Of a stretch of DNA of 64,000 nt, positions 4,908-61,323 are shown in pieces. The stretch spans positions 182,902-246,901 of IMG/VR virus record IMGVR_UViG_3300046542_000248; one strand, written 5' to 3'. The stretch's first letter is position 1. Each line of letters opens with the position of its first letter. Below the pieces are notes generated by a model. That model had not been told where the DNA came from and did not search any database. It was given only the letters and a program-made list of their open reading frames with translations. The position numbers and the translations under genes are program-made.

Positions 4908-5229
4908 TTTTAGTGCAGAGATTAAAAAGACCATAGATCTATATGCAGATAATCCGCATTTATTTGTGCAAGATAGATCTAGAAAATTTGTTATTCATTG
5001 TACTAATTGTAAAGTGGAAATGTTTGGATCATCCAAGGAAGCATTAATTGAAACATGGAATAATCAACGAGATAGAATATCAATGCTACAATATGCAAAT
5101 TTACGCACTCATTTCCAAAAATTAATTAAAGAAGTCCTTGGACTTGATTACTATAATGAGGGAATGGATGTTTATATGTGCGATGAATTTTCATGTCGTG
5201 ACATTAAACAAAAATTAAAGAAGAAGTAA
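4873..5229 (+). CDS. Lar-like zinc-finger protein with C-terminal extension
   Basis: SCPFCD...CTNC...SKEALIETWN. Confidence 0.7.
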   Translation: MEAILHSCPFCDFSAEIKKTIDLYADNPHLFVQDRSRKFVIHCTNCKVEMFGSSKEALIETWNNQRDRISMLQYANLRTHFQKLIKEVLGLDYYNEGMDVYMCDEFSCRDIKQKLKKK

Positions 5230-5240
5230 ACCTTTATATG
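5229..5240 (+). promoter_or_regulatory. putative nvRNAP promoter, AACC-N6-TG class
   Basis: AACC tttata TG, 23 nt before the SbcC start. Confidence 0.55.
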
Positions 5241-5263
5241 ATCTTGGGAGAGGGTGAATATAA

Positions 5264-7990
5264 TTGTATCGTTTAAAGACCTTCGAAGCTAATAACTTTA
5301 TAGGATTTTATAATGGTCTGAGTAAGAAGAAAATTACTTTAGATCTTAGTCGTTTTAGAGACAAATCTGTTTTTGTTATCATTGGTGCAAATACCAAAGG
5401 AAAGTCAACACTAGCATCTATTCTTCATCCATTCTCTGGCACTACTGATAATCGTGATAAATTTATCAGAGAAGAGAAAGAAGGATATAAGCTATTAGTT
5501 TATGAAGATATGTATGACGAAAGTCGTCAGATAAAAATAAAGCATGTTTATATTCCTAATAAGTCTGGCTCTCATTCTACCAAATCATACATATTTAAGA
5601 TTGAAAATGGTGAGGAGCTGGATTTAAACCCTAATGGTAATGTATCATCATTTCTATTAGCGGTAGATCAAGAGTTCGGTATTGATCAGGATTTCCTGAG
5701 ACTATCCACTCAAAATGAAGATATGGTTGGTTTAGTTAAAATGACTGGAGCCAATCGTAAAGATCATATCTATAAATTTGTACCTAAAGCTGATGACAGT
5801 ACAATTTATCAACGAATTATTACCAAGAAGCATAGGGATGTGGCTTCATTCCTCAAATCAATTATTGACAAACTTGGTAAGATGGACGATGAAGTCACTG
5901 TTAGTGAAAAACTGAAAGAGATTGAGACTGCTACAAATGAACTCGTTGAGAAGCGAGATAAAACTATAGGAAAGATTAACAAGTACCAAGCAGAATTAGA
6001 TCAGATTGATCCTGATGGTAAACTTGAGTCTGACTATAAGGAAATCAAATCTACATTGAAAGATCTTGAGAGAACTCAAGAGAAACTATTATCCAGACTT
6101 GAAGGGATTCGAGAAAGATTTAGTATTGAATCTCTGATGGAATGTGATAAGAAACTGAATGATATCATTGCTACTCGTAATAAAGCATGGGAGCAATTGA
6201 TTGATCTTAGATCACGATTAAACTCGAAGAAGTATCTGAAGTCAACTCTATTAGACCAGATTACTGAAAAGGAATCATTCCTAAATCAGATATCTGGAGA
6301 TTATTCCAAATCAGATCTTGAAAAGTTGATGGATGAATACATTGCGACAGTTAAGAACTTTGACTCCAGAACTAAGAAGCTTAATAGCTCTTTGTCTGCT
6401 GATGATTTAAGACAAGGTATTACTGTCATTGAAAATCTCAGAGAATTTATGGTTGATGTTTATAATAACTGTGACAGTGCATCTATGCTTGAAGAAGCTA
6501 TTGGATACATATTCACAAATAAGCTTGAAGCTAAATATGCTGATACTAAAGAAAAGCATGATAAGATTAGGGAGAAAGTCGAAGGACTAACTTCCAATAT
6601 CACAAAACTATCTGCTTTTGAACACATGAAAAACAGTATAAGTAAACGTCCAAAAGACTGTACTATTGATTCATGTGAGTTCCTACAAGACTATCACAAG
6701 TGGATTCAAATTGATAAGAAGATTAAACAGTTTGAGTCTGATCTTGGTGAAGTTGATTCTGATTATAAAGATTTGATGGATAAAGTAAAGCGATATGCTG
6801 AGATGATCAATGTAAAAGGTAAAGTTGAAAACCTTGTGAATATCTACAAGAGTCAGCATTATCTTATTTCTAAGCTACCGTTCAATGACTCATTCTCTAC
6901 TCAAGAGAAACTTTTAAAGATCCTAGAGAAGTATAACTCAATCGAGAATGTAGAGAATCAATACTACGACTTGATTGAGATTCTTCAGGATAAGGCTGAG
7001 TATGAAGAAATTAAGAATATCAAAATTCCTAAGATTAAGATTGAGCTTGAGAAGTTTGATACTAATAAGAATATGATAGACACTATTAAGAAAGATCTTA
7101 CATCTCTAAATAGCAAGTATGATGAGGTATTTGCAGATATTAAGAAAGAAGATAAAGAGCTAGAAGACCTTGAAGAATTATATGAGGAACTTAACTCTAA
7201 GTCTGAAACTCTTACTGAAGCCAGAGATCAATTTGTTAAGCTTCAAGATGGTAAAGACAGCATCATTAAACTCTCTGATAAGTTTGATTCTATTAAGAAT
7301 AAAACTACTCGGATTGATGAGCTGCATGAGAATCTTGATGAGAAGAAAGATAAACTCAAAAGTATTGATTCTAAACTAAAACCTTTAACTACTGAGAGGG
7401 ACAAGTATAAGTATCAAGAAATCCGAATAAGAGAATATAATCTTGAAAAGGAAGTTCTTGAACAAAACTTTAAGATTATTGGCTTAATCAGAAAAGCACT
7501 ATCTACTGATAAGGGTATGGCTGTAAGTCTATTGAATATGTATGTGGATGAAATCAGAAGAACAGCAAATCTCTTACTTAGTGAGACATTTGATGGTACT
7601 CTACATCTACATCCGTTTAATATTGATGAGAAGGAGTTTGCAATTCCATTTAGTCATAATGGAGAAACTGTAGATGATATCTCTAAAGGTTCCACATCAG
7701 AAAGAGCATTTATGTCAACCTGTCTATCAATGTCACTTATCGAGCAAGTAATTGCTGAGTATGGTATATTGACACTAGATGAAGTTGATGCTGGATTCTC
7801 TGAGCAGAATAAAGCAGTATACTGTAATATTCTGATGAAACAAATCAAACGTATTGGAATCTCTCAGGTCTTCATGATTACTCATGCTAGACAGTACTAT
7901 GAGAACTACAAAGATTCTGTATGCTTCATCCTGTTCCCTGAACATGGTATGGACAAATTTGATTCAAGCAGTATGATTAAAATCGCCTAA
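5264..7990 (+). CDS. sbcC: SbcC/Rad50-like SMC ATPase
   Basis: Walker A GANTKGKST, long coiled coils, central Cys pair CTIDSC, signature SKGSTSE, Walker B LTLDEVD, H-loop MITH. Confidence 0.92.
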   Translation: MYRLKTFEANNFIGFYNGLSKKKITLDLSRFRDKSVFVIIGANTKGKSTLASILHPFSGTTDNRDKFIREEKEGYKLLVYEDMYDESRQIKIKHVYIPNKSGSHSTKSYIFKIENGEELDLNPNGNVSSFLLAVDQEFGIDQDFLRLSTQNEDMVGLVKMTGANRKDHIYKFVPKADDSTIYQRIITKKHRDVASFLKSIIDKLGKMDDEVTVSEKLKEIETATNELVEKRDKTIGKINKYQAELDQIDPDGKLESDYKEIKSTLKDLERTQEKLLSRLEGIRERFSIESLMECDKKLNDIIATRNKAWEQLIDLRSRLNSKKYLKSTLLDQITEKESFLNQISGDYSKSDLEKLMDEYIATVKNFDSRTKKLNSSLSADDLRQGITVIENLREFMVDVYNNCDSASMLEEAIGYIFTNKLEAKYADTKEKHDKIREKVEGLTSNITKLSAFEHMKNSISKRPKDCTIDSCEFLQDYHKWIQIDKKIKQFESDLGEVDSDYKDLMDKVKRYAEMINVKGKVENLVNIYKSQHYLISKLPFNDSFSTQEKLLKILEKYNSIENVENQYYDLIEILQDKAEYEEIKNIKIPKIKIELEKFDTNKNMIDTIKKDLTSLNSKYDEVFADIKKEDKELEDLEELYEELNSKSETLTEARDQFVKLQDGKDSIIKLSDKFDSIKNKTTRIDELHENLDEKKDKLKSIDSKLKPLTTERDKYKYQEIRIREYNLEKEVLEQNFKIIGLIRKALSTDKGMAVSLLNMYVDEIRRTANLLLSETFDGTLHLHPFNIDEKEFAIPFSHNGETVDDISKGSTSERAFMSTCLSMSLIEQVIAEYGILTLDEVDAGFSEQNKAVYCNILMKQIKRIGISQVFMITHARQYYENYKDSVCFILFPEHGMDKFDSSSMIKIA

Positions 7991-8008
7991 CGGTTTAATG
8001 CAATTATC

Positions 8009-8020
8009 AACATTTATATA
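8009..8020 (+). promoter_or_regulatory. putative late promoter AACA-N6-TA
   Basis: AACA tttata TA; matches the AR9 late consensus. Confidence 0.65.
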
Positions 8021-8051
8021 GATTTTAATTAAAAAAGGATGGTGATTCACT

Positions 8052-8525
8052 ATGGGCAGTAATAAAGAAGATCGTCGCAGTCCTTCAACTTCATTTATTC
8101 ACGGTATAAAAGTTCGTAAAAGCGTGGCACAAGCTGCTCCAGTGAGTGGTACTGATGCAATTGTTACATGGGATGTAGAGGATTGGGATAGTGTTGCAGT
8201 TGGTGAATCTAAATACCATAGCATTGTAACTAACACTACCCAACTGATTGCTCCTCGTGAAGGGAAGTATACTCTTAAAGCTTCCTTGGATTATGCAGCA
8301 AACGCAACAGGTCTTCGTTCTGTTGGTTACAAAGTTAATGGCGGAGCAACTCTGCTATTCACTTCTATCACAGCGGCTGCTTCGGACACGGTTGCAGGGT
8401 TTGTTGATATTGCACTTGCTGAGGGTGATTATGTTGAAATCGTGGCAAATCATACAGCAGGCGCTACTTTAGATGTTGAAGCAACTGTGCGTACATTTGC
8501 TACATTGCAATTTAACGGTTACTAA
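8052..8525 (+). CDS. beta-sandwich (C1q/TNF-like) protein, likely virion fibre or decoration
   Basis: all-beta pattern with APREGKYTLKAS and LAEGDYVEI; late promoter. Confidence 0.55.
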   Translation: MGSNKEDRRSPSTSFIHGIKVRKSVAQAAPVSGTDAIVTWDVEDWDSVAVGESKYHSIVTNTTQLIAPREGKYTLKASLDYAANATGLRSVGYKVNGGATLLFTSITAAASDTVAGFVDIALAEGDYVEIVANHTAGATLDVEATVRTFATLQFNGY

Positions 8526-13100: not shown

Positions 13101-13112
13101 TATTACGATGTT
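13101..13112 (-). promoter_or_regulatory. putative late promoter AACA-N6-TA
   Basis: minus strand AACA tcgtaa TA. Confidence 0.65.
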
Positions 13113-14429: not shown

Positions 14430-14441
14430 TATTTATATGTC
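14430..14441 (-). promoter_or_regulatory. putative late promoter GACA-N6-TA
   Basis: minus strand GACA tataaa TA. Confidence 0.55.
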
Positions 14442-14465
14442 ATCCAGTCTCTTATAAGCGTTAAA

Positions 14466-14475
14466 TATATATTAT
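14466..14475 (+). promoter_or_regulatory. putative early promoter TATATATTAT
   Basis: exact motif. Confidence 0.65.
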
Positions 14476-14780: not shown

Positions 14781-14792
14781 AACCCTTAGATA
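14781..14792 (+). promoter_or_regulatory. putative nvRNAP promoter, AACC-N6-TA class
   Basis: AACC cttaga TA before the DNA polymerase. Confidence 0.55.
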
Positions 14793-19341: not shown

Positions 19342-19353
19342 AACCAGATATTA
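19342..19353 (+). promoter_or_regulatory. putative nvRNAP promoter, AACC-N6-TA class
   Basis: AACC agatat TA. Confidence 0.55.
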
Positions 19354-20961: not shown

Positions 20962-20973
20962 AACCAATTCGTA
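20962..20973 (+). promoter_or_regulatory. putative nvRNAP promoter, AACC-N6-TA class
   Basis: AACC aattcg TA before the chaperonin. Confidence 0.55.
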
Positions 20974-24343: not shown

Positions 24344-25858
24344 ATGAGAGCTGATGTCTGTAAACCAAATAGGTATCTAACCGAACAAACTAAACTATTC
24401 AGACTGGGAAAGAAGGACACATTCATTTGTGACTTCGAGAAAATGTTTCCCAATATCGAGAAAAAAGGCTTAAACATCTTTTACATCCCTCGTCCTGCAT
24501 TCTATAAGAAGGGAGATTTAATCTGCGATACAATCAATGTATTTATGAACTATTACGATCCAGATCGTGAGTTAATTACCTGCTATATCAATATGAAGGT
24601 TATGACCGACCTGAGTAATCTAACGTATACGTTCAAAAGCTTCATCAACGATATTGTGAACAAGGTATTCAGCAAATCAATGGTGAAGAAAGTTCGAGGC
24701 TTCGTAGAAGAACAATATCGAGTTGACCTTGAAATCTCTACAGACAAAGATGAGAAATACAAGGAAAACCCGTATCAATTTACGAACAAACATGGAAAGG
24801 TATTGATGGCGATCAGTACTGCTATCAAAATTATCATTCCAATTATCTCCCATTACTATTCAGTACGAAAAGACATGGTAGAAGATATGATCATGAAGAA
24901 ATTCTTGTATCACTGCTTCTATGCCTTATTCCCTATCTTCGAGAAAGATGAAGAGGATAGAGATAAGGATATGAATATCTATAACAAGCTTTACGCTACA
25001 GTGGACAAGATTATCGAAAACTCGACTCACACTGATAGTGGTATGTGGAAACGTAATAAGAACAAAGGTATTACGCCTTCCTCAGAAAAGACTCGGATTA
25101 CCAAAATGGTTATCCAAGATCTTCTGTACAAATATGAATTTGATAAGATCCTTATTAACTTGAATTATGTAGGTATCAGAGGTGCTCTGAAATTTACAAT
25201 TGAAGGTAAGGATACTCATGATTATTCAGATATCAATACCAAGCGTTCCGATAGTAAGATGTCCGGTCTGGAACAATTGGAAATGAACGCTGCGAGAATT
25301 GATGAGCGAGATATTATTATCTCAAGTGCGGGTAGTAAGCATAAGATCGAAAAACTTGTAAAGCAATATAAGATTGAGATCAAAGACGAGGACATGAAGT
25401 TCTATGAGAATAATCTTCAGATGTCGTCCACTCAAACTAATATGGTCTTGCAATTCTTTGCTGATGACTTTAAAGGCTTAGAGAATATGAAACTCATTAC
25501 TAGGCAAGACTTCTTTAGACTGATTATCATCTTGAAGGAAGAGTTATATAGAAGAGGATTCCGTGTGGTTCCAAATCTTATTACTGGTCGTCCTTCTAAT
25601 CGTATCAAGGGAAGAAAGATTGGAACCAAGAAATTGGCGAAGATCAAAGCATTCCCACGCTACTATAACTTGATGAAGCAATACAAAGATGTAACTTCAA
25701 GTATCAATGAAGACATCATCATCAAGTACATCGGTACGTTTATCAACAACCCTCTTACATACGTAGATCACCAAAACAAGGCTCTACTTGGAGAGGACAT
25801 CGAGATTAACGAAAATATGATCATTGATGAGACTATCCGTCTGATCGAAATGTTCTAA
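24344..25858 (+). CDS. non-virion RNAP promoter-specificity subunit (AR9 gp226/phiKZ gp68-like)
   Basis: size, position near the chaperonin as in AR9 (g226/g228), and recalled similarity (DFEKMF, YxxxDxI, SxLEQLEMN..RxD); needs HHpred confirmation. Confidence 0.72.
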   Translation: MRADVCKPNRYLTEQTKLFRLGKKDTFICDFEKMFPNIEKKGLNIFYIPRPAFYKKGDLICDTINVFMNYYDPDRELITCYINMKVMTDLSNLTYTFKSFINDIVNKVFSKSMVKKVRGFVEEQYRVDLEISTDKDEKYKENPYQFTNKHGKVLMAISTAIKIIIPIISHYYSVRKDMVEDMIMKKFLYHCFYALFPIFEKDEEDRDKDMNIYNKLYATVDKIIENSTHTDSGMWKRNKNKGITPSSEKTRITKMVIQDLLYKYEFDKILINLNYVGIRGALKFTIEGKDTHDYSDINTKRSDSKMSGLEQLEMNAARIDERDIIISSAGSKHKIEKLVKQYKIEIKDEDMKFYENNLQMSSTQTNMVLQFFADDFKGLENMKLITRQDFFRLIIILKEELYRRGFRVVPNLITGRPSNRIKGRKIGTKKLAKIKAFPRYYNLMKQYKDVTSSINEDIIIKYIGTFINNPLTYVDHQNKALLGEDIEINENMIIDETIRLIEMF

Positions 25859-29113: not shown

Positions 29114-29893
29114 ATGAACAATGTACAATCTTGGGTACCAACGAAAGAAATGAAAGTAGTAAGCTTTAAAAATGATGTAATCGTATTTCCGTTTGAACAA
29201 GCAGGATTTCCACTAACAAATCCACACTTCAAAAACGAACGTCAAAATTACAAAAAGAATTTTGACCAAATTACACATTTCATTAATTATTTTATGAATG
29301 TGTACGATGTTGCAAGTCACGTAATTGATACGTATAACTTGCATAAGATCGTCGTTGATTCTAGTCTAGCACCGCGTTTGGAATATTTCGTAAATAACTT
29401 CTATACTGATCTATTCACACAAGAAGTTATTGACAAAATTAAACAAATGGTGAAAGATAATCTGGATCATGAAAACGTTTCTAACCATGTGTATTATGAA
29501 GCTATAAAAACCGAAGATTTGCTAATTATGTCTATCGCAACCAGATTAGTTCTACCAATGATAACTCATTATGATATCATGGAGCACAATGGTTCGGGCA
29601 GAAATATATACATCTATATCAAAGAATTATTTAAACGATTTGGTTTTAATGCACTTAATACCGAACTATCTCTAATGTGTATAGATAGAGTTCGGACCAA
29701 CTATACTGATAACAGGATACTTTGGGTTCAACAAAATTATCCTCTTACGCAGATTGCTCTTAATTTATTCGAAAAAGCTATCGTCACAAATGCATTGTAT
29801 AAATTCGATTTTGATAAGAATCCATTATCATTTATGGAAATTATTATCTCGCAATCGTTACTATTTGTGACGGCATCAAAGCAACCAGAATAA
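29114..29893 (+). CDS. truncated paralog of the gp226-like sigma subunit (N-terminal domain only)
   Basis: collinear motifs shared with 24344..25858 (FE..F; YKK..D.I...IN.FMN.YD; S.A....P.I.HY; LYK..FDK). Confidence 0.75.
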   Translation: MNNVQSWVPTKEMKVVSFKNDVIVFPFEQAGFPLTNPHFKNERQNYKKNFDQITHFINYFMNVYDVASHVIDTYNLHKIVVDSSLAPRLEYFVNNFYTDLFTQEVIDKIKQMVKDNLDHENVSNHVYYEAIKTEDLLIMSIATRLVLPMITHYDIMEHNGSGRNIYIYIKELFKRFGFNALNTELSLMCIDRVRTNYTDNRILWVQQNYPLTQIALNLFEKAIVTNALYKFDFDKNPLSFMEIIISQSLLFVTASKQPE

Positions 29894-32587: not shown

Positions 32588-32675
32588 TAACTAGTAACAA
32601 TACCATCTATATAGCGTTTCTAAATACTTATTATTTAATAAACCTTTAATAGAGAGGAAACGAGGTGAAGACTAA

Positions 32676-39227: not shown

Positions 39228-39288
39228 CACTAGGCAACCTCCTGTCAACGAATAATTTTTACTCCGTTGTAATTATAATTACAGGTTA

Positions 39289-39300
39289 AACACATCAATA
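39289..39300 (+). promoter_or_regulatory. putative late promoter AACA-N6-TA
   Basis: AACA catcaa TA. Confidence 0.6.
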
Positions 39301-40667: not shown

Positions 40668-40679
40668 AACAATCGAATA
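40668..40679 (+). promoter_or_regulatory. putative late promoter AACA-N6-TA
   Basis: AACA atcgaa TA. Confidence 0.6.
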
Positions 40680-41834: not shown

Positions 41835-41846
41835 AACCTTTAATTA
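41835..41846 (+). promoter_or_regulatory. putative nvRNAP promoter, AACC-N6-TA class
   Basis: AACC tttaat TA before RusA. Confidence 0.55.
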
Positions 41847-42875: not shown

Positions 42876-42887
42876 AACCTTATATTA
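42876..42887 (+). promoter_or_regulatory. putative nvRNAP promoter, AACC-N6-TA class
   Basis: AACC ttatat TA before the lysin. Confidence 0.55.
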
Positions 42888-46305: not shown

Positions 46306-46306
46306 A

Positions 46307-48679: not shown

Positions 48680-48691
48680 TATAAGACTGTT
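48680..48691 (-). promoter_or_regulatory. putative late promoter AACA-N6-TA
   Basis: minus strand AACA gtctta TA. Confidence 0.65.
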
Positions 48692-53014: not shown

Positions 53015-53047
53015 TTATAAAACATCTCCTTCCTTAAAATATACGGT

Positions 53048-53059
53048 TATTCAGGTGTT
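53048..53059 (-). promoter_or_regulatory. putative late promoter AACA-N6-TA
   Basis: minus strand AACA cctgaa TA. Confidence 0.65.
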
Positions 53060-53104
53060 CCTTTCATATAAATACACCCATTAAAACTTCAATATTAAAA
53101 GGAA

Positions 53105-53114
53105 TATATATTAT
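53105..53114 (+). promoter_or_regulatory. putative early promoter TATATATTAT
   Basis: exact motif. Confidence 0.65.
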
Positions 53115-53145
53115 TACTATAGATAAAGAGAAAGGAATTGATCAT

Positions 53146-53361: not shown

Positions 53362-53542
53362 TATTATTTCTATTGCATTCCATTTGCCACCCTCTTGTCA
53401 TCATCTATAAAGATGAAAACTAATAATTTACAAATGGTCATCGGAAATAGTATTAATTCAATTATACAGCCTTTAAAGGTTGTATAAAAAAGAAGATAAG
53501 GATTATTTTTTTCTAAAATTAAATATCCAACATAGTTATTTA

Positions 53543-53554
53543 AACACACAAATA
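53543..53554 (+). promoter_or_regulatory. putative late promoter AACA-N6-TA
   Basis: AACA cacaaa TA. Confidence 0.55.
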
Positions 53555-53588
53555 ATATTAATTTATTAATTTCCCCGAACTGGAAGGA

Positions 53589-54719
53589 GTGTTGAGTTTT
53601 ATGATCATCGAAGATCTAATTATGCTCGGGAAAAAGGTGATTAAGGATAATATCTTAAAATCCAAAAAAGTCACTTTATCCCAACGATTCAAGTCACTAT
53701 CACAGGCTTCGACTGAATCTACTTATTTTTTCCCAATTGCATGCTCGGAACAAGCTACGCCTGATGAGATTGCAATGTCTATGAAGTTATTTGAGAGGAA
53801 CTATGCTATCTTTACACGAACGGCGTTCTCTCTCATCCCGTATGTCGAAATGTCTAGCTCGGAGTATGGTATTAAGGAGCATCTTTCCAAGGTTCATCAA
53901 AACATTGGAGTTATGCCGAATATGGGTTCTTACAAGTATTCACTTGAAGCATCTACTGAAAATATTAACTATGGTGTACTGAATGAGAACAATGCTTCCA
54001 ATGCATTCGTAAACCATGTTAAAGCGAAAGTATCTAATGACAATACTAGTATTGTAGGTAATTCAAGAGGTCAGAATGGTCAAGCAGCACCGATCACTGT
54101 TGACTATGAGTGGAAGAAAGCAAATGAAGTTCTTCCTACTACGGTAAATATTCCGCTTCGAGTTAATGGTGACAATATGGATCTTCCGGTTCATATTAAA
54201 GCCAATGTTCACAAAGTTCCTACATCTGTATTGGTGCAGGATATTGTTAAAAGTATGAATCAAAGTAAAGGTTTCCTAAACTTTGTTCAATACGTTTCTG
54301 GCGAACAAAAATCTCTAGTCGATTTCCTATTTGGCGTATCCAATATGAAGGAAGATATTTTGAAAACAAATTCTTCTCCTTGGTTGGATGCATTCAAACG
54401 TAGAAAACGTCTTGCTAATCTTGCATGGGGTACAGTTGCTGATAATTATAAACCGATCGGTACAATTGTATTGACCATGAATGAAGTAAACATCTTAAAG
54501 AATCAATATGAAATTGACGTTTTTGTGGAGGCTAAGAAGATTATGACGCAGTACTTCCTGCTTGGATTTATGATCCTCGATCAGACAAATGAAACTGCTC
54601 ATATTCTATTTGATTCCTTCCCAGGATTCCAAGAGTATCCATACAAAACTCTTGAACGTGAAGCTAGTAATCAAGACAAAACATTACGCGATATGATTCG
54701 TGCAATGGGTCGTATCTAA
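53589..54719 (+). CDS. virion structural protein
   Basis: 376 aa; late promoter; structural context. Confidence 0.6.
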   Translation: MLSFMIIEDLIMLGKKVIKDNILKSKKVTLSQRFKSLSQASTESTYFFPIACSEQATPDEIAMSMKLFERNYAIFTRTAFSLIPYVEMSSSEYGIKEHLSKVHQNIGVMPNMGSYKYSLEASTENINYGVLNENNASNAFVNHVKAKVSNDNTSIVGNSRGQNGQAAPITVDYEWKKANEVLPTTVNIPLRVNGDNMDLPVHIKANVHKVPTSVLVQDIVKSMNQSKGFLNFVQYVSGEQKSLVDFLFGVSNMKEDILKTNSSPWLDAFKRRKRLANLAWGTVADNYKPIGTIVLTMNEVNILKNQYEIDVFVEAKKIMTQYFLLGFMILDQTNETAHILFDSFPGFQEYPYKTLEREASNQDKTLRDMIRAMGRI

Positions 54720-54739
54720 AGAAGGGTGGTAAAGTCCAA

Positions 54740-55726
54740 ATGCAATTACAACGAGCTGACCTTGAATTACATGGATTGATTCAAGAGAATTACACTGGAA
54801 CTCTTACTATGCATAAGTTTATGAATTTGACAGAATCTGATAAGGTTTCCATCAGCAAAGGACTCATTGATCAAATCTATGTGACTATTGCTGAACGGTA
54901 TAACTCTATCAACTTCGAAATGGTTCCTAAATCTCTTGGTAAGATTAAAACCATGAAAGAGTATGAAAATCTTAGAGCTTCAATCGACTTGCTTATTGGT
55001 ATTGCTAATGAATCTAAGCAGCCGATCCCTGAAGTTGAGATTATCAGACAATCACTTGATAATTTGGTCATGTTTGAAGAAGCATTCTTCACTGGTTATA
55101 TGAAGAAAAATGCTCCTATCATCATGACTTACAATCTTCTTGCAATGGCAGTATTCTGTAGTACCTCACTTATGATATCCGTATTGGTTGATTTTATTAA
55201 TCAAGGAGCAAGTGGCGGCGATGCAAGACCTTCAGAATCTGTTGATATTATTATCAATCAGAAATACAAACGTCATCAAAATTATTTGATGATTGATGCA
55301 TTGAAGAAATTCAATGATCAAGTTGGTAATGGTAGTTTTGCTCAAACACTTCAAACGTACAATAGACAAAATGCCCAGAACTTAAATGAATCAGCAATCT
55401 TGACTACTGGTTTAGTAATTATCGGTATTGTGTTTATCCTGAAATTCATTCCTCTTGTAAAAGAACTTATCTACCTCTTCTATTACACGAGATTGAAACT
55501 TAGTGATGCACTTGCTATCCAAGCCGACCTTATCAATGGTAACATTGAAGCTCTTAAAAATAAGGGCGTTAGTAAAGATAGCAAGATATTCAAAATTCAA
55601 AAATGGTTTAGTGATAAGCTTACGGATCTTTCCAATAAGTTTGCTTTCACTTATGAAAAAGGCGAAAAACAGGCTGAGATTGAATCTAGGGTGAAACTTA
55701 CACCTGAAGATGTCATGCTCTTTTAG
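54740..55726 (+). CDS. virion structural protein with TM segment
   Basis: LNESAILTTGLVIIGIVFILKFIP; co-transcribed. Confidence 0.6.
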   Translation: MQLQRADLELHGLIQENYTGTLTMHKFMNLTESDKVSISKGLIDQIYVTIAERYNSINFEMVPKSLGKIKTMKEYENLRASIDLLIGIANESKQPIPEVEIIRQSLDNLVMFEEAFFTGYMKKNAPIIMTYNLLAMAVFCSTSLMISVLVDFINQGASGGDARPSESVDIIINQKYKRHQNYLMIDALKKFNDQVGNGSFAQTLQTYNRQNAQNLNESAILTTGLVIIGIVFILKFIPLVKELIYLFYYTRLKLSDALAIQADLINGNIEALKNKGVSKDSKIFKIQKWFSDKLTDLSNKFAFTYEKGEKQAEIESRVKLTPEDVMLF

Positions 55727-55728
55727 AT

Positions 55729-56223
55729 ATGTTTAATGATGTATTTGATAGATTCCATGATAGGAAGAAACTAATCTTTCTGGGCGGTACCTGTAATGAA
55801 ACCACCTGGAGAGATAAACTTATTCCTAAACTGGATGCTGACTATCATATGCCACTTGACTTTACCTGGGATAAAGATGTTACTAAATTAAGTAACGATA
55901 GTTTTAATCCAGTTGTAAAAAATTGGACCCCTGCTGACTATCAGAAAGAGCTTGAAGTTCGAGCATCTGCTGATTATCTTGTATATGTAATCACTCCTGC
56001 AATGAGCGGAGTTTATAGTATTGCGGAAGTAATTGATGATAGTAATAAGAAACCGTCCAAAACGATCTTCTGCTATCTTCGTACTGACGAAGTAAAAGGT
56101 AAGTTTTATAAATTCAACGAGGGACAATGTAGATCATTGGATGCTGTTGGTAAGATGGTTGTAACTAACGGTGCTAAATGGTTCAAATCACTCGATGAAA
56201 TTATTTCTTATCTAAATTCCTAA
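55729..56223 (+). CDS. nucleoside 2-deoxyribosyltransferase-like protein
   Basis: IFLGGTC..WR, FNPVV, ADYLVYVI, YSIAE. Confidence 0.75.
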   Translation: MFNDVFDRFHDRKKLIFLGGTCNETTWRDKLIPKLDADYHMPLDFTWDKDVTKLSNDSFNPVVKNWTPADYQKELEVRASADYLVYVITPAMSGVYSIAEVIDDSNKKPSKTIFCYLRTDEVKGKFYKFNEGQCRSLDAVGKMVVTNGAKWFKSLDEIISYLNS

Positions 56224-56273
56224 ACCTGTGAAGTGAGAGTCGCTTTTTTAGTGACTCTTGCTTTATATTTGCC

Positions 56274-56285
56274 GACAATAAGATA
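56274..56285 (+). promoter_or_regulatory. putative late promoter GACA-N6-TA
   Basis: GACA ataaga TA. Confidence 0.55.
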
Positions 56286-56310
56286 TATCATATAAGGGGA
56301 TGGTGTACAC

Positions 56311-56544
56311 ATGAGTATTGAAACTAAACTTAAATGCATTCTAGAGGGAACATTCATAGAAGAAACTGTATTAACTAGCAGTGAAACCGACGAACTTTAT
56401 GATTTAAAGGATAAAGTTAAGACAGCTAGAGATAGAATGCTGTTCATAAAAGATCCTTCTGAGAAACGTAGTCGTCAAGCAGAACTTGAGCATATGGAGG
56501 ATAGACTACATTCTCTTAGGTCCAAAGCCTTTGCAAGAGGATGA
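56311..56544 (+). CDS. small tagged internal head protein
   Basis: MSIETKLKCILEG then a helical hairpin. Confidence 0.65.
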   Translation: MSIETKLKCILEGTFIEETVLTSSETDELYDLKDKVKTARDRMLFIKDPSEKRSRQAELEHMEDRLHSLRSKAFARG

Positions 56545-56555
56545 GGAGGTTTGAA

Positions 56556-57680
56556 ATGGATATTAAAGAAAAGTTAAAGTATATACAAGAAGGACACTCC
56601 TTCAGCGAAATCGTTTCGGATAATTTCACTCCACTTAATCAAGTATTGAAAGAATCTCATGAGCTATTCATGGAATCTTTTATGGCTGATGCTAAATACA
56701 TTATCGAGATGGGCGAAGATCTCAAATCTAAAGCTACATTCTTTGATCATGTTAAAAATGTATTGAAATGGTTACGTGATAAAGTAGTTCAGTTCATTAA
56801 CTTTATACGTCAAAAGCTATTCTCTTCAGGTAAAGGTACTAAACAAACTGTTAAGAATGTGAAAGATACTGCTGCTAAGATGGAGATCATTGGTCGTAAA
56901 CCATCAAAACGTATTAATCCTGAAGATGAGCCAGATACATATAGTGATAATTCTGAAGATCATGGGATTCTTCATAAAGATGGAACTCTTCACTATAATC
57001 CAGAAAATCATGAGATTACTATATTCTCTAAAGTTCTGGATACTGATAACTTCTTCGATTCTGGATACAAGAGGATATATAATACTCTTCATGAGTATAT
57101 TTCCAAACTGGAGCAGAATCCAAGTAATCATGATCAAATAATTTCTGTAGATGATGTGATTAATACAAAACCTTTTCTCAATAAGGTATTCAAAGAATCA
57201 CTCTCAGTTAATTATGATAAACTAGAAATCTTTAAAAAGATTTATGGTGATCTTATCACTAAACCTATTACAGTTCGTGAGCTAACACTCTTAGCTGATA
57301 AGCTGTATAGTATGGATGAAGAATCTACTGTATTTGCTAATTGGATACAGAAATCTTTACCCAGAGCATTGGATGATGTTGAAAGACACTTTACTAGAAA
57401 TATGCAACTGATTAAAGATAAACTTGAAGTCGGCTCATCTAAAAATGTTCAAGCTGATACTGAGATGGTTAATAATCTTAATGATGCATTAGCTAAAGTT
57501 ATTAAGCTTATGAATATGCAAATGTCGGTTATTCAAATATTTGCCCAAATGCACGTTGAAGTATTTGTGCATCTTAAGGGTGAGATTGAACATTATGACT
57601 GGGTATTGAATCCATCTAATCAAGATTACGATCAGGATGACTTTAATAGCTATGATAATCATGACGGGTTAATTCATTAG
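56556..57680 (+). CDS. internal head protein, KLxxIQEG family
   Basis: MDIKEKLKYIQEG; LKES; VLKWLRDKVVQFINF. Confidence 0.72.
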   Translation: MDIKEKLKYIQEGHSFSEIVSDNFTPLNQVLKESHELFMESFMADAKYIIEMGEDLKSKATFFDHVKNVLKWLRDKVVQFINFIRQKLFSSGKGTKQTVKNVKDTAAKMEIIGRKPSKRINPEDEPDTYSDNSEDHGILHKDGTLHYNPENHEITIFSKVLDTDNFFDSGYKRIYNTLHEYISKLEQNPSNHDQIISVDDVINTKPFLNKVFKESLSVNYDKLEIFKKIYGDLITKPITVRELTLLADKLYSMDEESTVFANWIQKSLPRALDDVERHFTRNMQLIKDKLEVGSSKNVQADTEMVNNLNDALAKVIKLMNMQMSVIQIFAQMHVEVFVHLKGEIEHYDWVLNPSNQDYDQDDFNSYDNHDGLIH

Positions 57681-57684
57681 TACA

Positions 57685-57715
57685 GAGAGATACTTCTAAG
57701 GGAGTATCTCTTTTC
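57685..57715 (+). terminator. intrinsic terminator
   Basis: gagagatact/agtatctct-ttt. Confidence 0.7.
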
Positions 57716-57723
57716 ACTTTGAA

Positions 57724-57735
57724 AACATCGTTATA
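57724..57735 (+). promoter_or_regulatory. putative late promoter AACA-N6-TA
   Basis: AACA tcgtta TA. Confidence 0.65.
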
Positions 57736-57746
57736 ATACTTATTAT

Positions 57747-58820
57747 ATGGAGGGATACAATTTGTTCAATATCGAGCGTAAAGCTAACCGACTTAATGAA
57801 TCTATTTCTATCAACCTTGGTAAAAATACATTCAAAGATACTCTCCTTGAAGCTGGTCTTGATCACTTGAAACTTGATTCAGTGATTACTACAGCTCTGC
57901 AAGAATCTAATCAAGTATATGATGGACATGTGCAAAATAGTTTAAGAGAATACTCTATAGAATCTCTTAACAAAGCTATGGGAATTCTTGAAACTACTAT
58001 TGATATTATTTCAGCATTCAAGAATATCGTTGCTGGAGAAATGGCTCAATTTAAAGCTATCAATAAACGGGTTATTGAAACTTATGAACCTTTATTGAAA
58101 CGACTTGATCGTCACAAGTATGGATATCAAATTCCTGAATACAATCTTGAAAATTTGGAAGCTATTGATATTCTTACTCGTGTACTGAATCTACTCTCTA
58201 AGAAATTCAATTTCAATTTATATGGACCTGGTGCTATAAATTGCGATGAAGTAGAAAGTGCCATTACTAGATTTAAAAGAAATTACAATGAGTATCATGA
58301 GGATCTGAAACGTGCAATTCTTGGAGTTCCTAACTCTGCAAGTATTGATGACTTCCCAGGAATTGTAAGATCCTTCCTAGTAAGTGATAACAATCTTCAG
58401 ATGAAACGTATCGGAGATGACATATTTAATGATCTTCGGTCTGCTGAGATTGGAATTGATTCACTTGATAATGTGATAGGATTGCTGCAAAAAGAAATCT
58501 TTGGCATCCTTGAGCATAAAGCAGTCGTTGAAAATGGTACTGGTAATGATTATGTCAATAGTGTATATACAAATGCTATTATAATTCGTACCAATTTAAT
58601 TGCATCAAGTTTAACCTATATTGAAGATATTATTAAGATCAAAATACACATTGCTGAAGAAATGTGTATCAATCATCGGAAAGTAATCATCGACGGATAT
58701 GAAAAAATATCGAAGGACCCAGAAAGTAACGAGGGTATTTATCTGCCTAACAACGATCCAGAGATCGTTAAAACGCATTCAGAATACCTTAGTGGGCATT
58801 GGATTGGCGCTTCGAAATGA
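57747..58820 (+). CDS. internal head protein (related family)
   Basis: LNES, LLEA, LQES sites; helical. Confidence 0.6.
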   Translation: MEGYNLFNIERKANRLNESISINLGKNTFKDTLLEAGLDHLKLDSVITTALQESNQVYDGHVQNSLREYSIESLNKAMGILETTIDIISAFKNIVAGEMAQFKAINKRVIETYEPLLKRLDRHKYGYQIPEYNLENLEAIDILTRVLNLLSKKFNFNLYGPGAINCDEVESAITRFKRNYNEYHEDLKRAILGVPNSASIDDFPGIVRSFLVSDNNLQMKRIGDDIFNDLRSAEIGIDSLDNVIGLLQKEIFGILEHKAVVENGTGNDYVNSVYTNAIIIRTNLIASSLTYIEDIIKIKIHIAEEMCINHRKVIIDGYEKISKDPESNEGIYLPNNDPEIVKTHSEYLSGHWIGASK

Positions 58821-58870
58821 ATTATGAGTTTAGTAACATCTGATTGTAACAAATAACTTCTTTTTTTTGT

Positions 58871-58882
58871 AACATAGGTATA
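58871..58882 (+). promoter_or_regulatory. putative late promoter AACA-N6-TA
   Basis: AACA taggta TA. Confidence 0.7.
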
Positions 58883-58920
58883 AGGAAAATTAATTTTTAA
58901 CCCCCTAAGGAGGAAACCAC

Positions 58921-60090
58921 ATGTTTAAAGATCTTTTTGAAAGTTCCACAGGTGCAAGCGCTGGTACTCTGCAACTTGAGTCTGCATTTGATTCCGCTGA
59001 ATTCTCTCTTTACCTGAACGAAACTGATTCCACAATTAATGGATTGGTTGATTCCTACCGCGGCGTAATGACAGAAGCTCTTACTGAGAGCGCTGGCATT
59101 ATGAACGAAAGCGTTAACCTTGTTCTTGAACAAGCTAACGAGCATGTTGGTAACAAAATCGTAGCAGCTTTGAAAAAGCTGTGGAACTGGATCGTTAAGA
59201 TCGTTGATAGCTCTATCAACTTCGTAATGACTCTAGTAACAAGCAACAAAAAATTCATCGAAAAGATCAAACCGGAAGTTGCTAAAAAGAACCTTTCCGC
59301 TGAAGATCTTGCAAAAATCACGATGACTTCGTATAACTACAAGCCACAAGCTATCAGCACTGAAAAAGTGACGACTGTATTGGGTGAAGTTGATGCTGAA
59401 GCTCGTGCTGATTACAGCGCAGCAAACAAAGAAAAGCTTGACAAAGTTGTAGAAACTTACAACGAAAACAAACGTAAATCTGCTGGTTGGGAAAAAATCT
59501 CCCTGGCAAACCGTTTGACAAACGTTAGCATGCATGAGGTACAAGACTGGGCACGTTATAAAGACGAGCTTCGTGTATCTCTTCAAGGCGGCGAGAAGAA
59601 AACTACGAAGACTTTCTCCATGGATTTCTTCAAAGTTATCGAAACTTATTCCCAAAATGCCGAAGCAATCAAAGGCATTATGTCCAAATCCAAAGAAGAT
59701 TTCAAGAAAACCATCGACCACATCATCCAAAAAGCTGGATATGCTAAGGCCGAAGGTAAAGGCGAAGGTGCTGATGCTAAAGCTGCATCCGGTCGCGTAG
59801 CTTTCTTGAACTACTTGCGTGCAAGAACTGCTGCTACAGCAGATGCGTTTGCAGAATTGATGAGCATGAAGCTCTCCATTCTTAAACGTGAAGTAGGCGA
59901 AGCTCGTTCATTCTGTATGCATGCGGCTCGCTACAATCCGAAAAAAGCAGAAGGCGCTGCATCCGTGAAAAACGAATCCGCCGCTGTTATTCCTTTCGAT
60001 CCATTATTCGAAGATGCTGAAGAAGTAACTGAAGCTGGTTCGCTTACTGAAGGTGCACAAGGCGGCGCTGCTGCTTCTGTAACTTTCTAA
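58921..60090 (+). CDS. abundant internal head protein (MFKDLFES N terminus)
   Basis: strong SD taaggagg, own promoter and terminator, high-expression-type codons, ES sites at both ends, LWNWIVKIV helix. Confidence 0.65.
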   Translation: MFKDLFESSTGASAGTLQLESAFDSAEFSLYLNETDSTINGLVDSYRGVMTEALTESAGIMNESVNLVLEQANEHVGNKIVAALKKLWNWIVKIVDSSINFVMTLVTSNKKFIEKIKPEVAKKNLSAEDLAKITMTSYNYKPQAISTEKVTTVLGEVDAEARADYSAANKEKLDKVVETYNENKRKSAGWEKISLANRLTNVSMHEVQDWARYKDELRVSLQGGEKKTTKTFSMDFFKVIETYSQNAEAIKGIMSKSKEDFKKTIDHIIQKAGYAKAEGKGEGADAKAASGRVAFLNYLRARTAATADAFAELMSMKLSILKREVGEARSFCMHAARYNPKKAEGAASVKNESAAVIPFDPLFEDAEEVTEAGSLTEGAQGGAAASVTF

Positions 60091-60105
60091 TAGCGTAACG
60101 ATAAG

Positions 60106-60137
60106 AGAGCATACTCCTTGTGAGTATGCTCTTTTTT
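60106..60137 (+). terminator. intrinsic terminator
   Basis: agagcatactc/gagtatgctct-ttttt. Confidence 0.85.
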
Positions 60138-60205
60138 ATTGGATTAAAAAGTATAAGTAGCCAGTATAGGCTACTTATTTTTTCGTCTTTATCTTCTTAT
60201 TTACC

Positions 60206-60217
60206 GACCCTTAAATA
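60206..60217 (+). promoter_or_regulatory. putative nvRNAP promoter GACC-N6-TA
   Basis: GACC cttaaa TA. Confidence 0.45.
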
Positions 60218-60250
60218 AGTAATTGTTACTATTTTAAGGGAGGCTACATA

Positions 60251-60583
60251 ATGAACACACAGCAAAAGCTAAAGTTAATAATGGAAGGTGCTATTCTCAA
60301 TGAAGGCGATGTTATTCAGTTTGGCGATCATCATTTGAGAGAAAGAAGATATCAAGAGGAATTAGATAGACTTCAAACCGAGTTCAATAGATTTATTGAT
60401 GACTTGGCACAAACTATTGCTTATCTCAGCAGAAAGAAAGAAGATGGTTCATTATCCAATGATGAATATCTTGCTAAGATGGGTGAACTTGAATCTCGAC
60501 GAGCATTGATGATTACTTATAATAGTAAGATTAATCATCTTAAGCATGAGATACAAACGATGCAGCAAAGTCGAGGGCATTAA
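60251..60583 (+). CDS. small tagged coiled-coil protein 1
   Basis: MNTQQKLKLIMEGAILNEGDVI. Confidence 0.75.
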   Translation: MNTQQKLKLIMEGAILNEGDVIQFGDHHLRERRYQEELDRLQTEFNRFIDDLAQTIAYLSRKKEDGSLSNDEYLAKMGELESRRALMITYNSKINHLKHEIQTMQQSRGH

Positions 60584-60585
60584 GT

Positions 60586-60909
60586 ATGGATATTAAAAAT
60601 GCCCTTAATCTAATCATGGAAGGTGTCATTCTAAATGAATCTGATGTGATAGATTTTACCGCAAGACAGAGAGTAAAGACATACGAAAATCAAATCAGAG
60701 AATATACAGCACAAGTTACAAAGATGACTGCTGAAGTTCATCGTCAATGGACTATTCTTGAAAGTAAAAAGAAATCTGGTCTTCTAACTGGTGAACAGTT
60801 TATAGAGCAGATGATGGCACTTCAACCTACAACTAGTAGGATTCGTGAAATAGAAACTCAAATTAATATTCTTCAAGATAAAATAGATGGATTATCAAGC
60901 CATGCTTAA
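60586..60909 (+). CDS. small tagged coiled-coil protein 2
   Basis: MDIKNALNLIMEGVILNESDVI. Confidence 0.75.
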   Translation: MDIKNALNLIMEGVILNESDVIDFTARQRVKTYENQIREYTAQVTKMTAEVHRQWTILESKKKSGLLTGEQFIEQMMALQPTTSRIREIETQINILQDKIDGLSSHA

Positions 60910-60923
60910 GGAGGAATAGTACT

Positions 60924-61250
60924 GTGGATACTGTAAAAAAGTGTTTAAAGTTAATTATGGAAGGTACTATTCTTAATGAAAGCGATGTCGTAGATTTTAC
61001 ATCCAGACATAATGCACAAAGATATGAAGAAGATATTCATAACTTCCAACTTCAGCTAAATAAAGTTACTATTGAAGTACGTGAAGCTGAGGATAAGTAC
61101 GATCGACAAAAGAATTCTGGAGAGATTACTACTCATGAATTCGTAGCTAAGAAATTGGCTCTTGAGCCTAAGAAAAAATTAATTCAGTATTATACTCGCC
61201 GAATAGGTGATGCGAAGGTAAATCTTCAATCACTACAGGCACATGCATAA
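60924..61250 (+). CDS. small tagged coiled-coil protein 3
   Basis: KCLKLIMEGTILNESDVV. Confidence 0.75.
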   Translation: MDTVKKCLKLIMEGTILNESDVVDFTSRHNAQRYEEDIHNFQLQLNKVTIEVREAEDKYDRQKNSGEITTHEFVAKKLALEPKKKLIQYYTRRIGDAKVNLQSLQAHA

Positions 61251-61311
61251 TAAAAAGTGAATAGTTCCTATGCCTAGGGAACTATTCATTTCTATATTTT
61301 ATTTTAAGTAA

Positions 61312-61323
61312 AACCTCTAATTA
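61312..61323 (+). promoter_or_regulatory. putative nvRNAP promoter, AACC-N6-TA class
   Basis: AACC tctaat TA. Confidence 0.5.

What the first reader, a model, noticed from the sequence alone, without database searches (positions are those of the whole stretch)
5229..61323. Two nvRNAP promoter classes differing at one base (AACC versus AACA) sort by gene function
AAC-N7-T[AG] occurs just upstream of many genes. AACC precedes SbcC (5229), PolB (14781), SSB (19342), chaperonin (20962), RusA (41835), lysin (42876) and 61333 (61312); primase has a near match at 32641. AACA/GACA precedes virion genes (8009, 13101, 14430, 39289, 40668, 48680, 53048, 53543, 56274, 57724, 58871). AACA-N6-TA/G is the established AR9 late consensus. 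The replication-biased AACC variant suggests a middle class, possibly tied to the two sigma-like proteins. Exceptions exist (lysin, 61333, 60206).
Basis: partly seen in the sequence, partly recalled or inferred. Interest (0 to 1): 0.75.

Follow-up and report, generated by a model that had tools for sequence, protein, structure and literature searches.

The report
Second conserved late-promoter variant (AACC)
An uncultured giant phage related to Bacillus phage AR9 carries, besides the known AACA late-promoter motif, a second evolutionarily conserved variant with C (or T/G) in place of the last A, found mainly before DNA-replication genes; this suggests a way of tuning gene expression but has not been tested experimentally.

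Summary
All cited motif sites are present at the stated coordinates. The loose pattern AAC-N7-TR is not enriched in the window as a whole. In the 8-65 nt upstream of start codons, on the sense strand, AACA-N6-TR (41 observed, about 14 expected) and AACC-N6-TR (17 observed, about 7 expected) are enriched. The tighter form AACC-N4-WWTA occurs 12 times against 2.5 expected. AACG and AACT are not clearly enriched.

The window is the last 64 kb of a 247-kb AR9-like jumbo phage. It has AR9-type early promoters, nvRNAP subunits and a gp226 (sigma-like) homologue.

In a relative with 62% mean protein identity, the -8 base is kept at orthologous promoters: 29 AACA/AACA and 5 AACC/AACC pairs, plus C/T and C/G exchanges. 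There is no A/C exchange. AACC before PolB is invariant in four lineages. AR9 itself has no AACC enrichment.

AACC sites favour replication genes (Fisher p about 0.01-0.03) and positions inside early operons (9/17 versus 7/41). Exceptions include a virion protein, the portal operon, the lysin and GroEL.

A truncated second gp226-like gene exists, but it is absent from relatives that keep the AACC sites. I rate this a new variant of a known promoter type. Its timing and the factor that reads it are untested.

The parts
5229..5240 (+). AACC-type site AACCTTTATATG, 24 nt before SbcC (5264-7990)
   Evidence: Site. SbcC. AACC-N6-TG is also before SbcC in lineages L034 and L037; G001 has AACT.
14781..14792 (+). 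AACC-type site AACCCTTAGATA, 33 nt before PolB (14825-18646). It lies downstream of the early promoter at 14463.
   Evidence: AACC-N6-TA is invariant in 4 lineages while the spacer and flanks diverge.
19342..19353 (+).
   Evidence: AACC is kept in G001 and L034. The SSB identity is unconfirmed.
20962..20973 (+). AACC-type site AACCAATTCGTA, 17 nt before the GroEL-like chaperonin (20990-22750)
   Evidence: Site and gene. It is not conserved in G001 or L034, so it is a weaker candidate.
32641..32652 (+). Near match AACCTTTAATAG before primase (32676-33731). The early promoter at 32575 lies upstream.
   Evidence: There is no counterpart in G001.
39276..39287 (-). AACC-type site AACCTGTAATTA, 49 nt before the 290-aa gene 38355-39227(-).
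41835..41846 (+). AACC-type site AACCTTTAATTA, 17 nt before RusA (41863-42564). It comes directly after the intrinsic terminator at 41782-41815.
   Evidence: G001 has AACG at this position.
42876..42887 (+). AACC-type site AACCTTATATTA, 26 nt before the endolysin (42913-44127)
   Evidence: The sequence tcttaaAACCTTATAT is identical in G001.
61312..61323 (+). AACC-type site AACCTCTAATTA before 61333-62301 (unknown function; a P-loop ATPase at 62303 follows). It comes after the terminator at 61255-61291.
   Evidence: G001 has AACCTACAATTA upstream of the orthologue.
60206..60217 (+). GACC variant GACCCTTAAATA before 60251-60583, after the terminator at 60153-60178
8009..8020 (+). AACA late-type site before 8052-8525 (virion structural PHROG)
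13101..13112 (-). AACA late-type site before 11824-13062(-)
   Evidence: AACA is kept in G001, L034 and L037.
14430..14441 (-). GACA variant before 13169-14401(-)
   Evidence: GACA is a conserved variant class.
39289..39300 (+). AACA site 74 nt before 39374-40657 (homologue of AR9 virion protein g165)
   Evidence: G001 has AACA at 76 nt.
40668..40679 (+). AACA site before 40713-41015
48680..48691 (-). AACA site before 46348-48642(-)
53048..53059 (-). AACA site before 51923-53014(-) (homologue of AR9 virion protein g213)
53543..53554 (+). AACA site before 53601-54719 (homologue of AR9 g214 minor virion protein)
56274..56285 (+). GACA variant before 56311-56544
   Evidence: GACA is kept in G001.
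57724..57735 (+). AACA site before 57762-58820
58871..58882 (+). AACA site before 58921-60090
   Evidence: The same 12-mer is present in G001.
24344..25858 (+). gp226 homologue (504 aa), the sigma-like promoter-specificity subunit of nvRNAP. It is preceded by the early promoter at 24284.
   Evidence: PDB 7S01_A E 6e-19 over the full length. phrog_25005. It has Gly at the position of AR9 V206.
29114..29893 (+). N-terminal-domain-only paralogue of gp226 (259 aa)
   Evidence: phmmer E 1e-8 to the 504-aa protein. hhalign probability 96%, aligned to columns 46-284. Absent from G001 and L034.
14463..14475 (+). Example of the AR9-type early (vRNAP) promoter AAATATATATTAT-N6-G. Others in the window start at 2488, 3392, 4036, 8597, 9161, 24284, 32575 and 53102.
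   Evidence: The consensus is as in PMC5312081.

Best explanation
The AACC sites (more exactly AAC-[C/T/G]-N6-T-A/G) are most likely genuine promoters of the phage's own non-virion RNA polymerase. I infer they are read by the same gp226-like sigma subunit that reads the AACA-N6-TA late promoters.

They form a conserved sub-class in which the -8 base is deliberately not A. Many sit inside operons started by AR9-type early promoters, in front of replication and recombination genes (PolB, SbcC, gyrB, DnaB, primase). There they would add polymerase-switch-independent transcription, probably weaker, as the internal late promoters do for AR9's 'continuously expressed' genes. Others stand alone after terminators (RusA, the lysin, 61333).

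Shown:
- the motif, its position and its enrichment;
- its conservation across lineages, with no exchange with AACA;
- the presence of the polymerase and its sigma-like subunit.

Inferred:
- that the sites start transcription;
- that the same holoenzyme reads both variants;
- that the -8 base sets strength or timing.
For: - Enrichment in the sense-strand promoter zone only.
- Same spacing, T at -1, A/G at +1, and A at -12 as the AACA sites.
- Flank similarity to AACA sites is higher than for AACT or AACG sites in the same zones.
- Orthologous conservation: AACC/AACC 5 against 0.4 expected, AACA/AACA 29 against 5.4 expected, and A/C exchanges 0 against about 3.3 expected by chance.
- The PolB site is invariant in 4 lineages with a divergent spacer. 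The SbcC site is kept in 3 of 4 lineages even though its position moved.
- For RusA and 61333 the AACC site lies between a strong terminator and the gene.
- 9 of 17 AACC sites lie downstream of an early promoter in the same strand block, against 7 of 41 AACA sites (p 0.009).
- AR9 orthologues PolB, SbcC, DnaB, gyrB and primase are low-level 'continuous' genes with early plus internal late promoters.
- A few TSS-mapped AR9 late promoters do carry AACC or AACT (g074, g057, g202, g246).
- A gp226 homologue and nvRNAP subunits are present.
- The 2.1bis helix, against which AR9 packs the -8 base, differs strongly here: SGMWKRNKNK against VVIWTYLKNM (PMC9209446).
Against: - There is no transcript data, so no site is shown to be a start site.
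- In AR9, substitutions at -8 abolish nvRNAP transcription in vitro (PMC5449584).
- The numbers are small: 12-17 sites.
- Some sites are not conserved: GroEL, the primase near-match, and RusA (which becomes AACG).
- One AACC match, at genome position 37451, lies in a terminator loop.
- Enrichment in relative G001 alone is weak (11 against 6.2, z 1.9).
- Function sorting has clear exceptions.
Confidence: 0.55

Rival explanations
1. The AACC sites are a true separate (middle) class that needs another specificity factor, for instance the N-terminal-domain-only gp226 paralogue or a modified holoenzyme. This would resemble the phiKZ middle promoters, which purified nvRNAP does not read in vitro.
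For: - There is no A/C exchange at -8 in orthologous sites.
- Neighbouring positions co-vary: T at -7 (p 0.017) and T at -2 (p 0.019).
- There is a replication-gene bias.
- A second gp226-like gene exists.
- There is a phiKZ precedent for two nvRNAP promoter classes (PMC5312081 discussion).
Against: - The paralogue is missing from G001 and L034, which keep AACC before PolB, the 281-aa gene, gyrB, the g205-like gene and the lysin.
- No other sigma-like gene was found.
- The -8 base varies among C, T and G, which fits loss of a contact better than a new specific contact.
- Late functions (lysin, portal operon, virion protein) also use the variant.
Confidence: 0.13
2. The AACC motifs are not promoters. 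They are conserved for another reason (a 5'-UTR or RNA-processing element, or the binding site of a regulator), or are partly chance matches in AT-rich spacers.
For: - There is no TSS data.
- The numbers are modest.
- One match lies in a terminator loop.
- Several tails are the palindromic TAATTA.
- AR9 mutagenesis says -8 is essential (PMC5449584).
Against: - The sites are strand-specific (12 sense against 1 antisense for the tight pattern).
- They have the same N6 spacing to TA and the same distance to start codons as the AACA sites.
- The core and the TA are conserved while the spacer diverges.
- Some sites sit right after terminators.
- Host-type sigma70 promoters are not enriched.
Confidence: 0.2
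3. The AACC sites are simply decayed, neutral versions of AACA late promoters with no class meaning.
For: AR9 tolerates a few AACY promoters in vivo.
Against: - Neutral drift would give A/C exchanges between lineages, and none is seen in 46 matched sites.
- The PolB and SbcC sites keep C in 3-4 lineages.
- AACC is enriched over AACG and AACT.
Confidence: 0.1

Closest known systems
AR9 late promoters, AACA-N6-T-A/G(+1), read on the template strand by nvRNAP with gp226 (PMC5312081, PMC5449584, PMC9209446)
   Same: - The AAC core at -11 to -9, the N6 spacing, T at -1 and A/G at +1.
- The position 10-60 nt before start codons.
- A gp226 homologue and split beta/beta' nvRNAP subunits are encoded.
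- AR9-type early promoters are also present.
- Internal late-type promoters sit inside early operons before replication genes.
   Different: - The -8 base is C (or T/G), not A. In AR9 that change abolishes transcription in vitro.
- AACC is not enriched in AR9 (4 against 3.6).
- AR9 orthologues (DnaB, RusA, primase, portal, vRNAP beta-C, amidases) use AACA.
- The genome here probably contains T, not dU: it has ThyX and dUTPase, and Gly at the V206 position.
phiKZ middle versus late promoters (both attributed to nvRNAP; only the late class is read in vitro)
   Same: Two promoter consensus types are apparently served by one non-virion polymerase, with replication-type genes in the non-late class.
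   Different: - The phiKZ consensus sequences are unrelated (late TATG).
- Here the two types differ at a single core base.
- Temporal behaviour here is unknown.
AR9 'continuously expressed' genes (tandem early plus late promoters)
   Same: Replication genes lie in early operons and have an internal late-type promoter. 9 of 17 AACC sites have this layout.
   Different: In AR9 the internal promoters are ordinary AACA. Here they are preferentially the non-A variant.

Membership tests
AR9-type nvRNAP late promoter | AACA at -11 to -8 | tested here: not met
   The AACC sites carry C at -8. The AACA sites in the same genome meet this feature (41 in promoter zones).
AR9-type nvRNAP late promoter | N6 spacer followed by T(-1) and A/G(+1) | tested here: met
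   All 17 zone AACC sites meet this by construction. The tight tail WWTA occurs in 12 against 2.5 expected. The TA is invariant in the 4-lineage PolB alignment.
AR9-type nvRNAP late promoter | Lies a short distance upstream of a gene on the sense strand | tested here: met
   Distances are 10-56 nt. For the tight pattern, 12 sites are sense and 1 antisense.
AR9-type nvRNAP late promoter | The genome encodes nvRNAP subunits and the gp226 specificity subunit | tested here: met
   tblastn gives hits to AR9 g270, g154, g105 and g089. The gp226 homologue matches PDB 7S01_A at E 6e-19.
AR9-type nvRNAP late promoter | Transcription starts at the A/G, is late, and depends on nvRNAP | not testable with these tools
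   There is no transcript data for this uncultured phage.
AR9-type nvRNAP late promoter | Requires deoxyuridine at template positions -11 and -10 | tested here: inconclusive
   G000 encodes ThyX and dUTPase. The gp226 homologue has Gly where AR9 has the U-discriminating V206. This suggests T is accepted, but base composition was not measured.
AR9-type early (vRNAP) promoter AAATATATATTAT-N6-G | Extended AT-rich 13-mer with G 6 nt downstream | tested here: not met
   The AACC sites do not contain it. Separate early promoters (about 45 genome-wide) were mapped, often upstream in the same operon.
phiKZ-type middle promoter class | Distinct timing and failure of purified nvRNAP to use it | not testable with these tools
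   This needs kinetics and in vitro transcription.
Host sigma70-type promoter | TTGACA-N16-18-TATAAT enrichment | tested here: not met
   76 found against 82 expected in window 41500-61400.

The most novel reading that the evidence does not exclude
The -8 base is a genuine class switch. On this reading, AACA promoters are opened by the gp226 N-terminal domain gripping the non-template A(-8). AAC-[not A] promoters lack that grip and fire only on DNA that is already unwound (replicating or heavily transcribed early operons), or with a helper such as the N-terminal-domain-only gp226 paralogue. That would give a replication-coupled 'middle' programme in an AR9-like phage that has also switched from U- to T-containing promoters.
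Probability: 0.12. Interest if true: 0.75.

Novelty: new variant of a known kind. Interest (0 to 1): 0.48.

Why it matters
AR9's non-virion RNA polymerase is the only multisubunit polymerase known to read its -10-like element on the template strand, and its consensus has been treated as a fixed AACA.

This natural lineage differs in three ways. It keeps the same machinery but maintains a second core variant under purifying selection. It uses that variant preferentially for replication genes. It also carries the very V206-to-Gly change that was engineered to make AR9's enzyme accept thymine.

That gives ready-made natural templates and protein variants for asking how the -8 base is read. It also lets one ask how a phage with only two polymerases builds more than two expression levels or times. 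Practically, it improves promoter annotation in uncultured AR9-like jumbo phages, where late promoters have been hard to predict.

Tried and rejected
- Whole-window enrichment of AAC-N7-TR: none (258 against 303). Only position-restricted tests are informative.
- AACG and AACT as equal partners: not enriched overall. A few individual AACT sites (DnaB, 117279, 18671-) are conserved.
- The AACC sites as AR9-type early promoters or host sigma70 promoters: rejected.
- The genome 37451 AACC match as a promoter: rejected because it sits in a terminator loop.
- PHROG and Pfam annotation of AACA- and AACC-driven genes: many gave no hit. Function sorting therefore rests on about 25 annotated genes.
- 'SSB' label: not confirmed. 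There is only a weak Whirly/PurA lead.
- The paralogue as the AACC factor: disfavoured because it is absent from G001 and L034.
- Searching the metagenome records through the genome search: those records are not held. I used the look-up of encoding contigs instead.
- A second scan of viral contigs with an alignment: found only the same relative.
- PDB sequence search with the 259-aa paralogue: no hit. Homology rests on phmmer and hhalign.
- No structure prediction was run.


Full report
**What the window is.** The window is the last 64 kb of a single 246,901-bp virus record (G000, 35% G+C). Its PolB is only about 27% identical to those of Bacillus phages AR9, PBS1 and BpSp, and no phage record matches at the DNA level. 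tblastn against AR9 (KU878088.1, fetched) finds 52 homologous genes. These include:
- all four split nvRNAP core subunits and vRNAP subunits;
- the major capsid protein, portal, sheath, tape measure and terminase;
- SbcC/D, DnaB, gyrase, UvsX, ligase and NrdEF.

I called 244 genes with a simple ORF, hexamer and RBS procedure. The ribosome-binding sites are strong GGAGG types.

**Check of the observation.** The loose pattern AAC-N7-TR is not enriched over the whole window: 258 matches against 303 expected. The signal appears only when position is taken into account. I defined a promoter zone as motif end 8-65 nt before a start codon, on the sense strand. Counts there, compared with order-1 and order-2 Markov simulations of the same zones:

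| Pattern | Observed | Expected | Comment |
|---|---|---|---|
| AACA-N6-TR | 41 | about 14 | z about 7 |
| AACC-N6-TR | 17 | about 7 | z 3.6-4.5 |
| AACC-N4-WWTA | 12 | 2.5 | 0 of 500 simulations reach 12; 1 antisense |
| AACG-N6-TR | 9 | about 5.5 | not enriched (z about 1.5) |
| AACT-N6-TR | 23 | 15-16 | marginal (z 1.6-2.1) |

An unbiased dyad search recovers three signals: the ribosome-binding site, an AT-rich motif, and AACA-N5-ATA or AACA-N6-TAA. After masking those, AACC-N6-TAA and AACC-N5-TTA are the best dyads that are not T-runs.

'SSB' (281 aa) has no Pfam or PHROG hit and only a weak Whirly/PurA-like lead. About five of the eleven 'virion' genes have homology support.

**The transcription system around it.** The AT-rich motif is the AR9 early (virion-polymerase) promoter AAATATATATTAT-N6-G, almost unchanged, in about 45 copies (consensus from PMC5312081). 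AACA-N6-T-A/G is the AR9 late consensus (PMC5312081), read on the template strand by nvRNAP through the sigma-like gp226 (PMC5449584, PMC9209446).

The window encodes a gp226 homologue at 24344-25858. It matches PDB 7S01_A at E 6e-19 over its full length and phrog_25005. As in AR9, an early promoter precedes it. Host-type sigma70 promoters are not enriched.

**Is the AACC variant a real, selected feature?** A relative, IMGVR_UViG_3300025530_000275 (G001, 207 kb), shares 143 reciprocal best hits at a mean 62% protein identity. I matched promoter-like sites by distance in orthologous upstream regions and compared the counts with random pairing of non-orthologous regions:

| Core in G000 / G001 | Observed | Expected |
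|---|---|---|
| AACA / AACA | 29 | 5.4 |
| AACC / AACC | 5 | 0.4 |
| GACA / GACA | 5 | 0.15 |
| AACC / AACT | 4 | 0.9 |
| AACC / AACG | 3 | 0.3 |
| AACT / AACT | 3 | 0.5 |
| AACA / AACC | 0 | about 3.3 by chance alone |
| AACA / GACA | 0 | not tabulated |

Two more lineages were recovered from metagenomes (L034 and L037).
- The PolB site is AACC-N6-TA in all four lineages, with different spacers (CTTAGA, CCTAAT, ATAAGA, CATATA) and divergent flanks.
- SbcC has AACC-N6-TG in three of four lineages, although the site has moved relative to the start codon.
- The 281-aa gene has AACC in three of three lineages.
- A neighbouring 412-aa gene has AACA in four of four.

Not every site is conserved. 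The GroEL site is G000-only, RusA is AACG in G001, and the primase near-match has no counterpart. One AACC match (genome 37451) lies in a terminator loop and is probably not a promoter.

RusA and gene 61333 are each separated from the upstream gene by a 15-bp-stem terminator. The AACC site lies between that terminator and the gene.

**How the variant differs from AACA.**
- The AACC sites share the A at -12 and the T-A-A-T around the start with the AACA sites. They resemble the AACA flanks more than AACT or AACG sites in the same zones do.
- They prefer T at -7 (10/17 against 10/41, p 0.017) and T at -2 (11/16 against 12/37, p 0.019).
- Because orthologous sites exchange C, T and G but not A, the class is better described as 'not A at -8'. 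DnaB helicase carries AACT in both genomes.
- GACA is a further conserved variant: 13 sense against 0 antisense in promoter zones.

The picture is therefore a family of core variants, each held fixed at its site, rather than exactly two classes.

**Sorting by function.** Among genes with a homology-based category:
- AACC precedes SbcC, PolB, RusA and gyrB, plus the primase near-match and DnaB (AACT).
- AACC also precedes a g205-like virion protein (genome 102231), the portal operon (171743), vRNAP beta-C (with N5 spacing), the lysin and GroEL.
- AACA precedes about 14 virion or packaging genes, but also UvsX and a g233-like nuclease.

Fisher tests of replication against virion genes give p 0.025 for strict sites and 0.010 with the near matches. 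This is a real tendency with clear exceptions.

A second regularity is layout. 9 of 17 AACC sites lie downstream of an early promoter in the same strand block, against 7 of 41 AACA sites (p 0.009). This mirrors AR9's 'continuously expressed' genes, where replication genes sit in early operons and carry an internal late promoter (PMC5312081). The AR9 orthologues PolB, SbcC, DnaB, gyrB and primase are low-abundance continuous genes.

**Comparison with AR9.**
- In AR9, AACA is strongly enriched (80 against 21) and AACC is not (4 against 3.6).
- The AR9 orthologues DnaB, RusA, primase, portal, vRNAP beta-C and the amidases all use AACA.
- Only about four of AR9's 118 TSS-mapped late promoters carry AACC or AACT (g074, g057, g202, g246).
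- Substitutions at -8 abolish AR9 nvRNAP transcription in vitro (PMC5449584).

The expanded non-A class is thus a feature of this lineage. I found no paper describing it.

**The 'two sigma-like proteins'.** A second gp226-like gene does exist at window 29114-29893 (259 aa). It aligns to the N-terminal domain, including the sigma2-like part, of the gp226 family: phmmer E 1e-8 and hhalign probability 96%. It lacks the C-terminal domain that anchors gp226 to the polymerase (domain limits from PMC9209446). It is absent from G001 and from L034, both of which keep AACC before PolB, the 281-aa gene and other genes. It therefore cannot be required for the class. Its role is open.

**Mechanism, as far as it can be inferred.** In AR9 the template -8 base is pressed by the beta' lid against the gp226 2.1bis helix, and the non-template A(-8) is held by the gp226 N-terminal domain during opening (PMC9209446). 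In this lineage the 2.1bis helix reads SGMWKRNKNK instead of VVIWTYLKNM, so a changed or relaxed reading of -8 is plausible. This is inference.

The most economical model is one holoenzyme and two or more core variants of different strength or opening requirement. The non-A variant would be used where modest, sustained expression is wanted. A separate factor or replication-coupled opening is possible but less likely.

**Side observation.** The Gly in that helix sits exactly where AR9 has V206, whose V206G change lets the AR9 enzyme accept thymine (PMC9209446). G000 encodes ThyX and a dUTPase. No homologue of AR9's UGI or dCMP deaminase was found. This lineage probably has thymine DNA and an nvRNAP naturally adapted to it.

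**Verdict.**
There is a conserved, function-biased second core variant, but it is not C-specific, not exclusive to replication genes, and not tied to the second sigma-like gene. Its timing is untested.
- It is a new variant of a known promoter type, of moderate interest.

Noticed in passing
window 24344-25858 (residue about 233); genome 177931-178392 and 36884-37426: The gp226 homologue has Gly where AR9 gp226 has V206, the residue whose V206G change lets AR9 nvRNAP accept thymine. The same Gly is present in G001 and L034. The genome also encodes ThyX and a dUTPase and lacks detectable AR9-like UGI or dCMP deaminase. This AR9-like lineage therefore probably has T-DNA and a naturally T-tolerant nvRNAP.
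   Followed up: partly
window 29114-29893: A 259-aa paralogue of gp226 comprises only the N-terminal (sigma2-like) domain (hhalign 96%). It is absent from the two relatives examined. Its function is unknown; it could be a decoy, a helper or a remnant.
   Followed up: partly
window 14430(-), 22767, 26774, 56274; genome-wide: GACA-N6-TR is a third conserved core variant. It occurs 13 times sense against 0 antisense in promoter zones. There are 5 GACA/GACA orthologous pairs against 0.15 expected, and none exchanges with AACA.
   Followed up: partly
genome 156638 (MCP) and 111770 (vRNAP beta-C) upstream regions (L009, L006): Both appear to use an N5 spacing: AACAAAGAATAAAT before the MCP and AACCTTAAATAAAT before vRNAP beta-C. 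Both are conserved in G001.
   Followed up: no
window 2488, 3392, 4036, 8597, 9161, 14463, 24284, 32575, 53102: Early promoters are almost identical to AR9's AAATATATATTAT-N6-G despite only about 25-30% protein identity between the phages. There are about 45 copies genome-wide.
   Followed up: yes
window 31236-32273 (-): A 345-aa ORF resembles only the N-terminal part of AR9 terminase g121. A full-length large terminase lies elsewhere (genome 161269-163431). It may be a duplicated or split terminase-like nuclease or ATPase.
   Followed up: no
genome 37451-37462 (L002): An AACC-N6-TA match sits in the loop of a conserved terminator hairpin (cacgAACC...GGTTcgtg followed by a T-run). This is a reminder that some motif matches are not promoters.
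   Followed up: partly
window 19388-20233: The 281-aa 'SSB' has no Pfam or PHROG hit. The protein-atlas neighbours include Whirly and PurA ssDNA-binding folds at low scores, so SSB remains a plausible but unproven label.
   Followed up: partly
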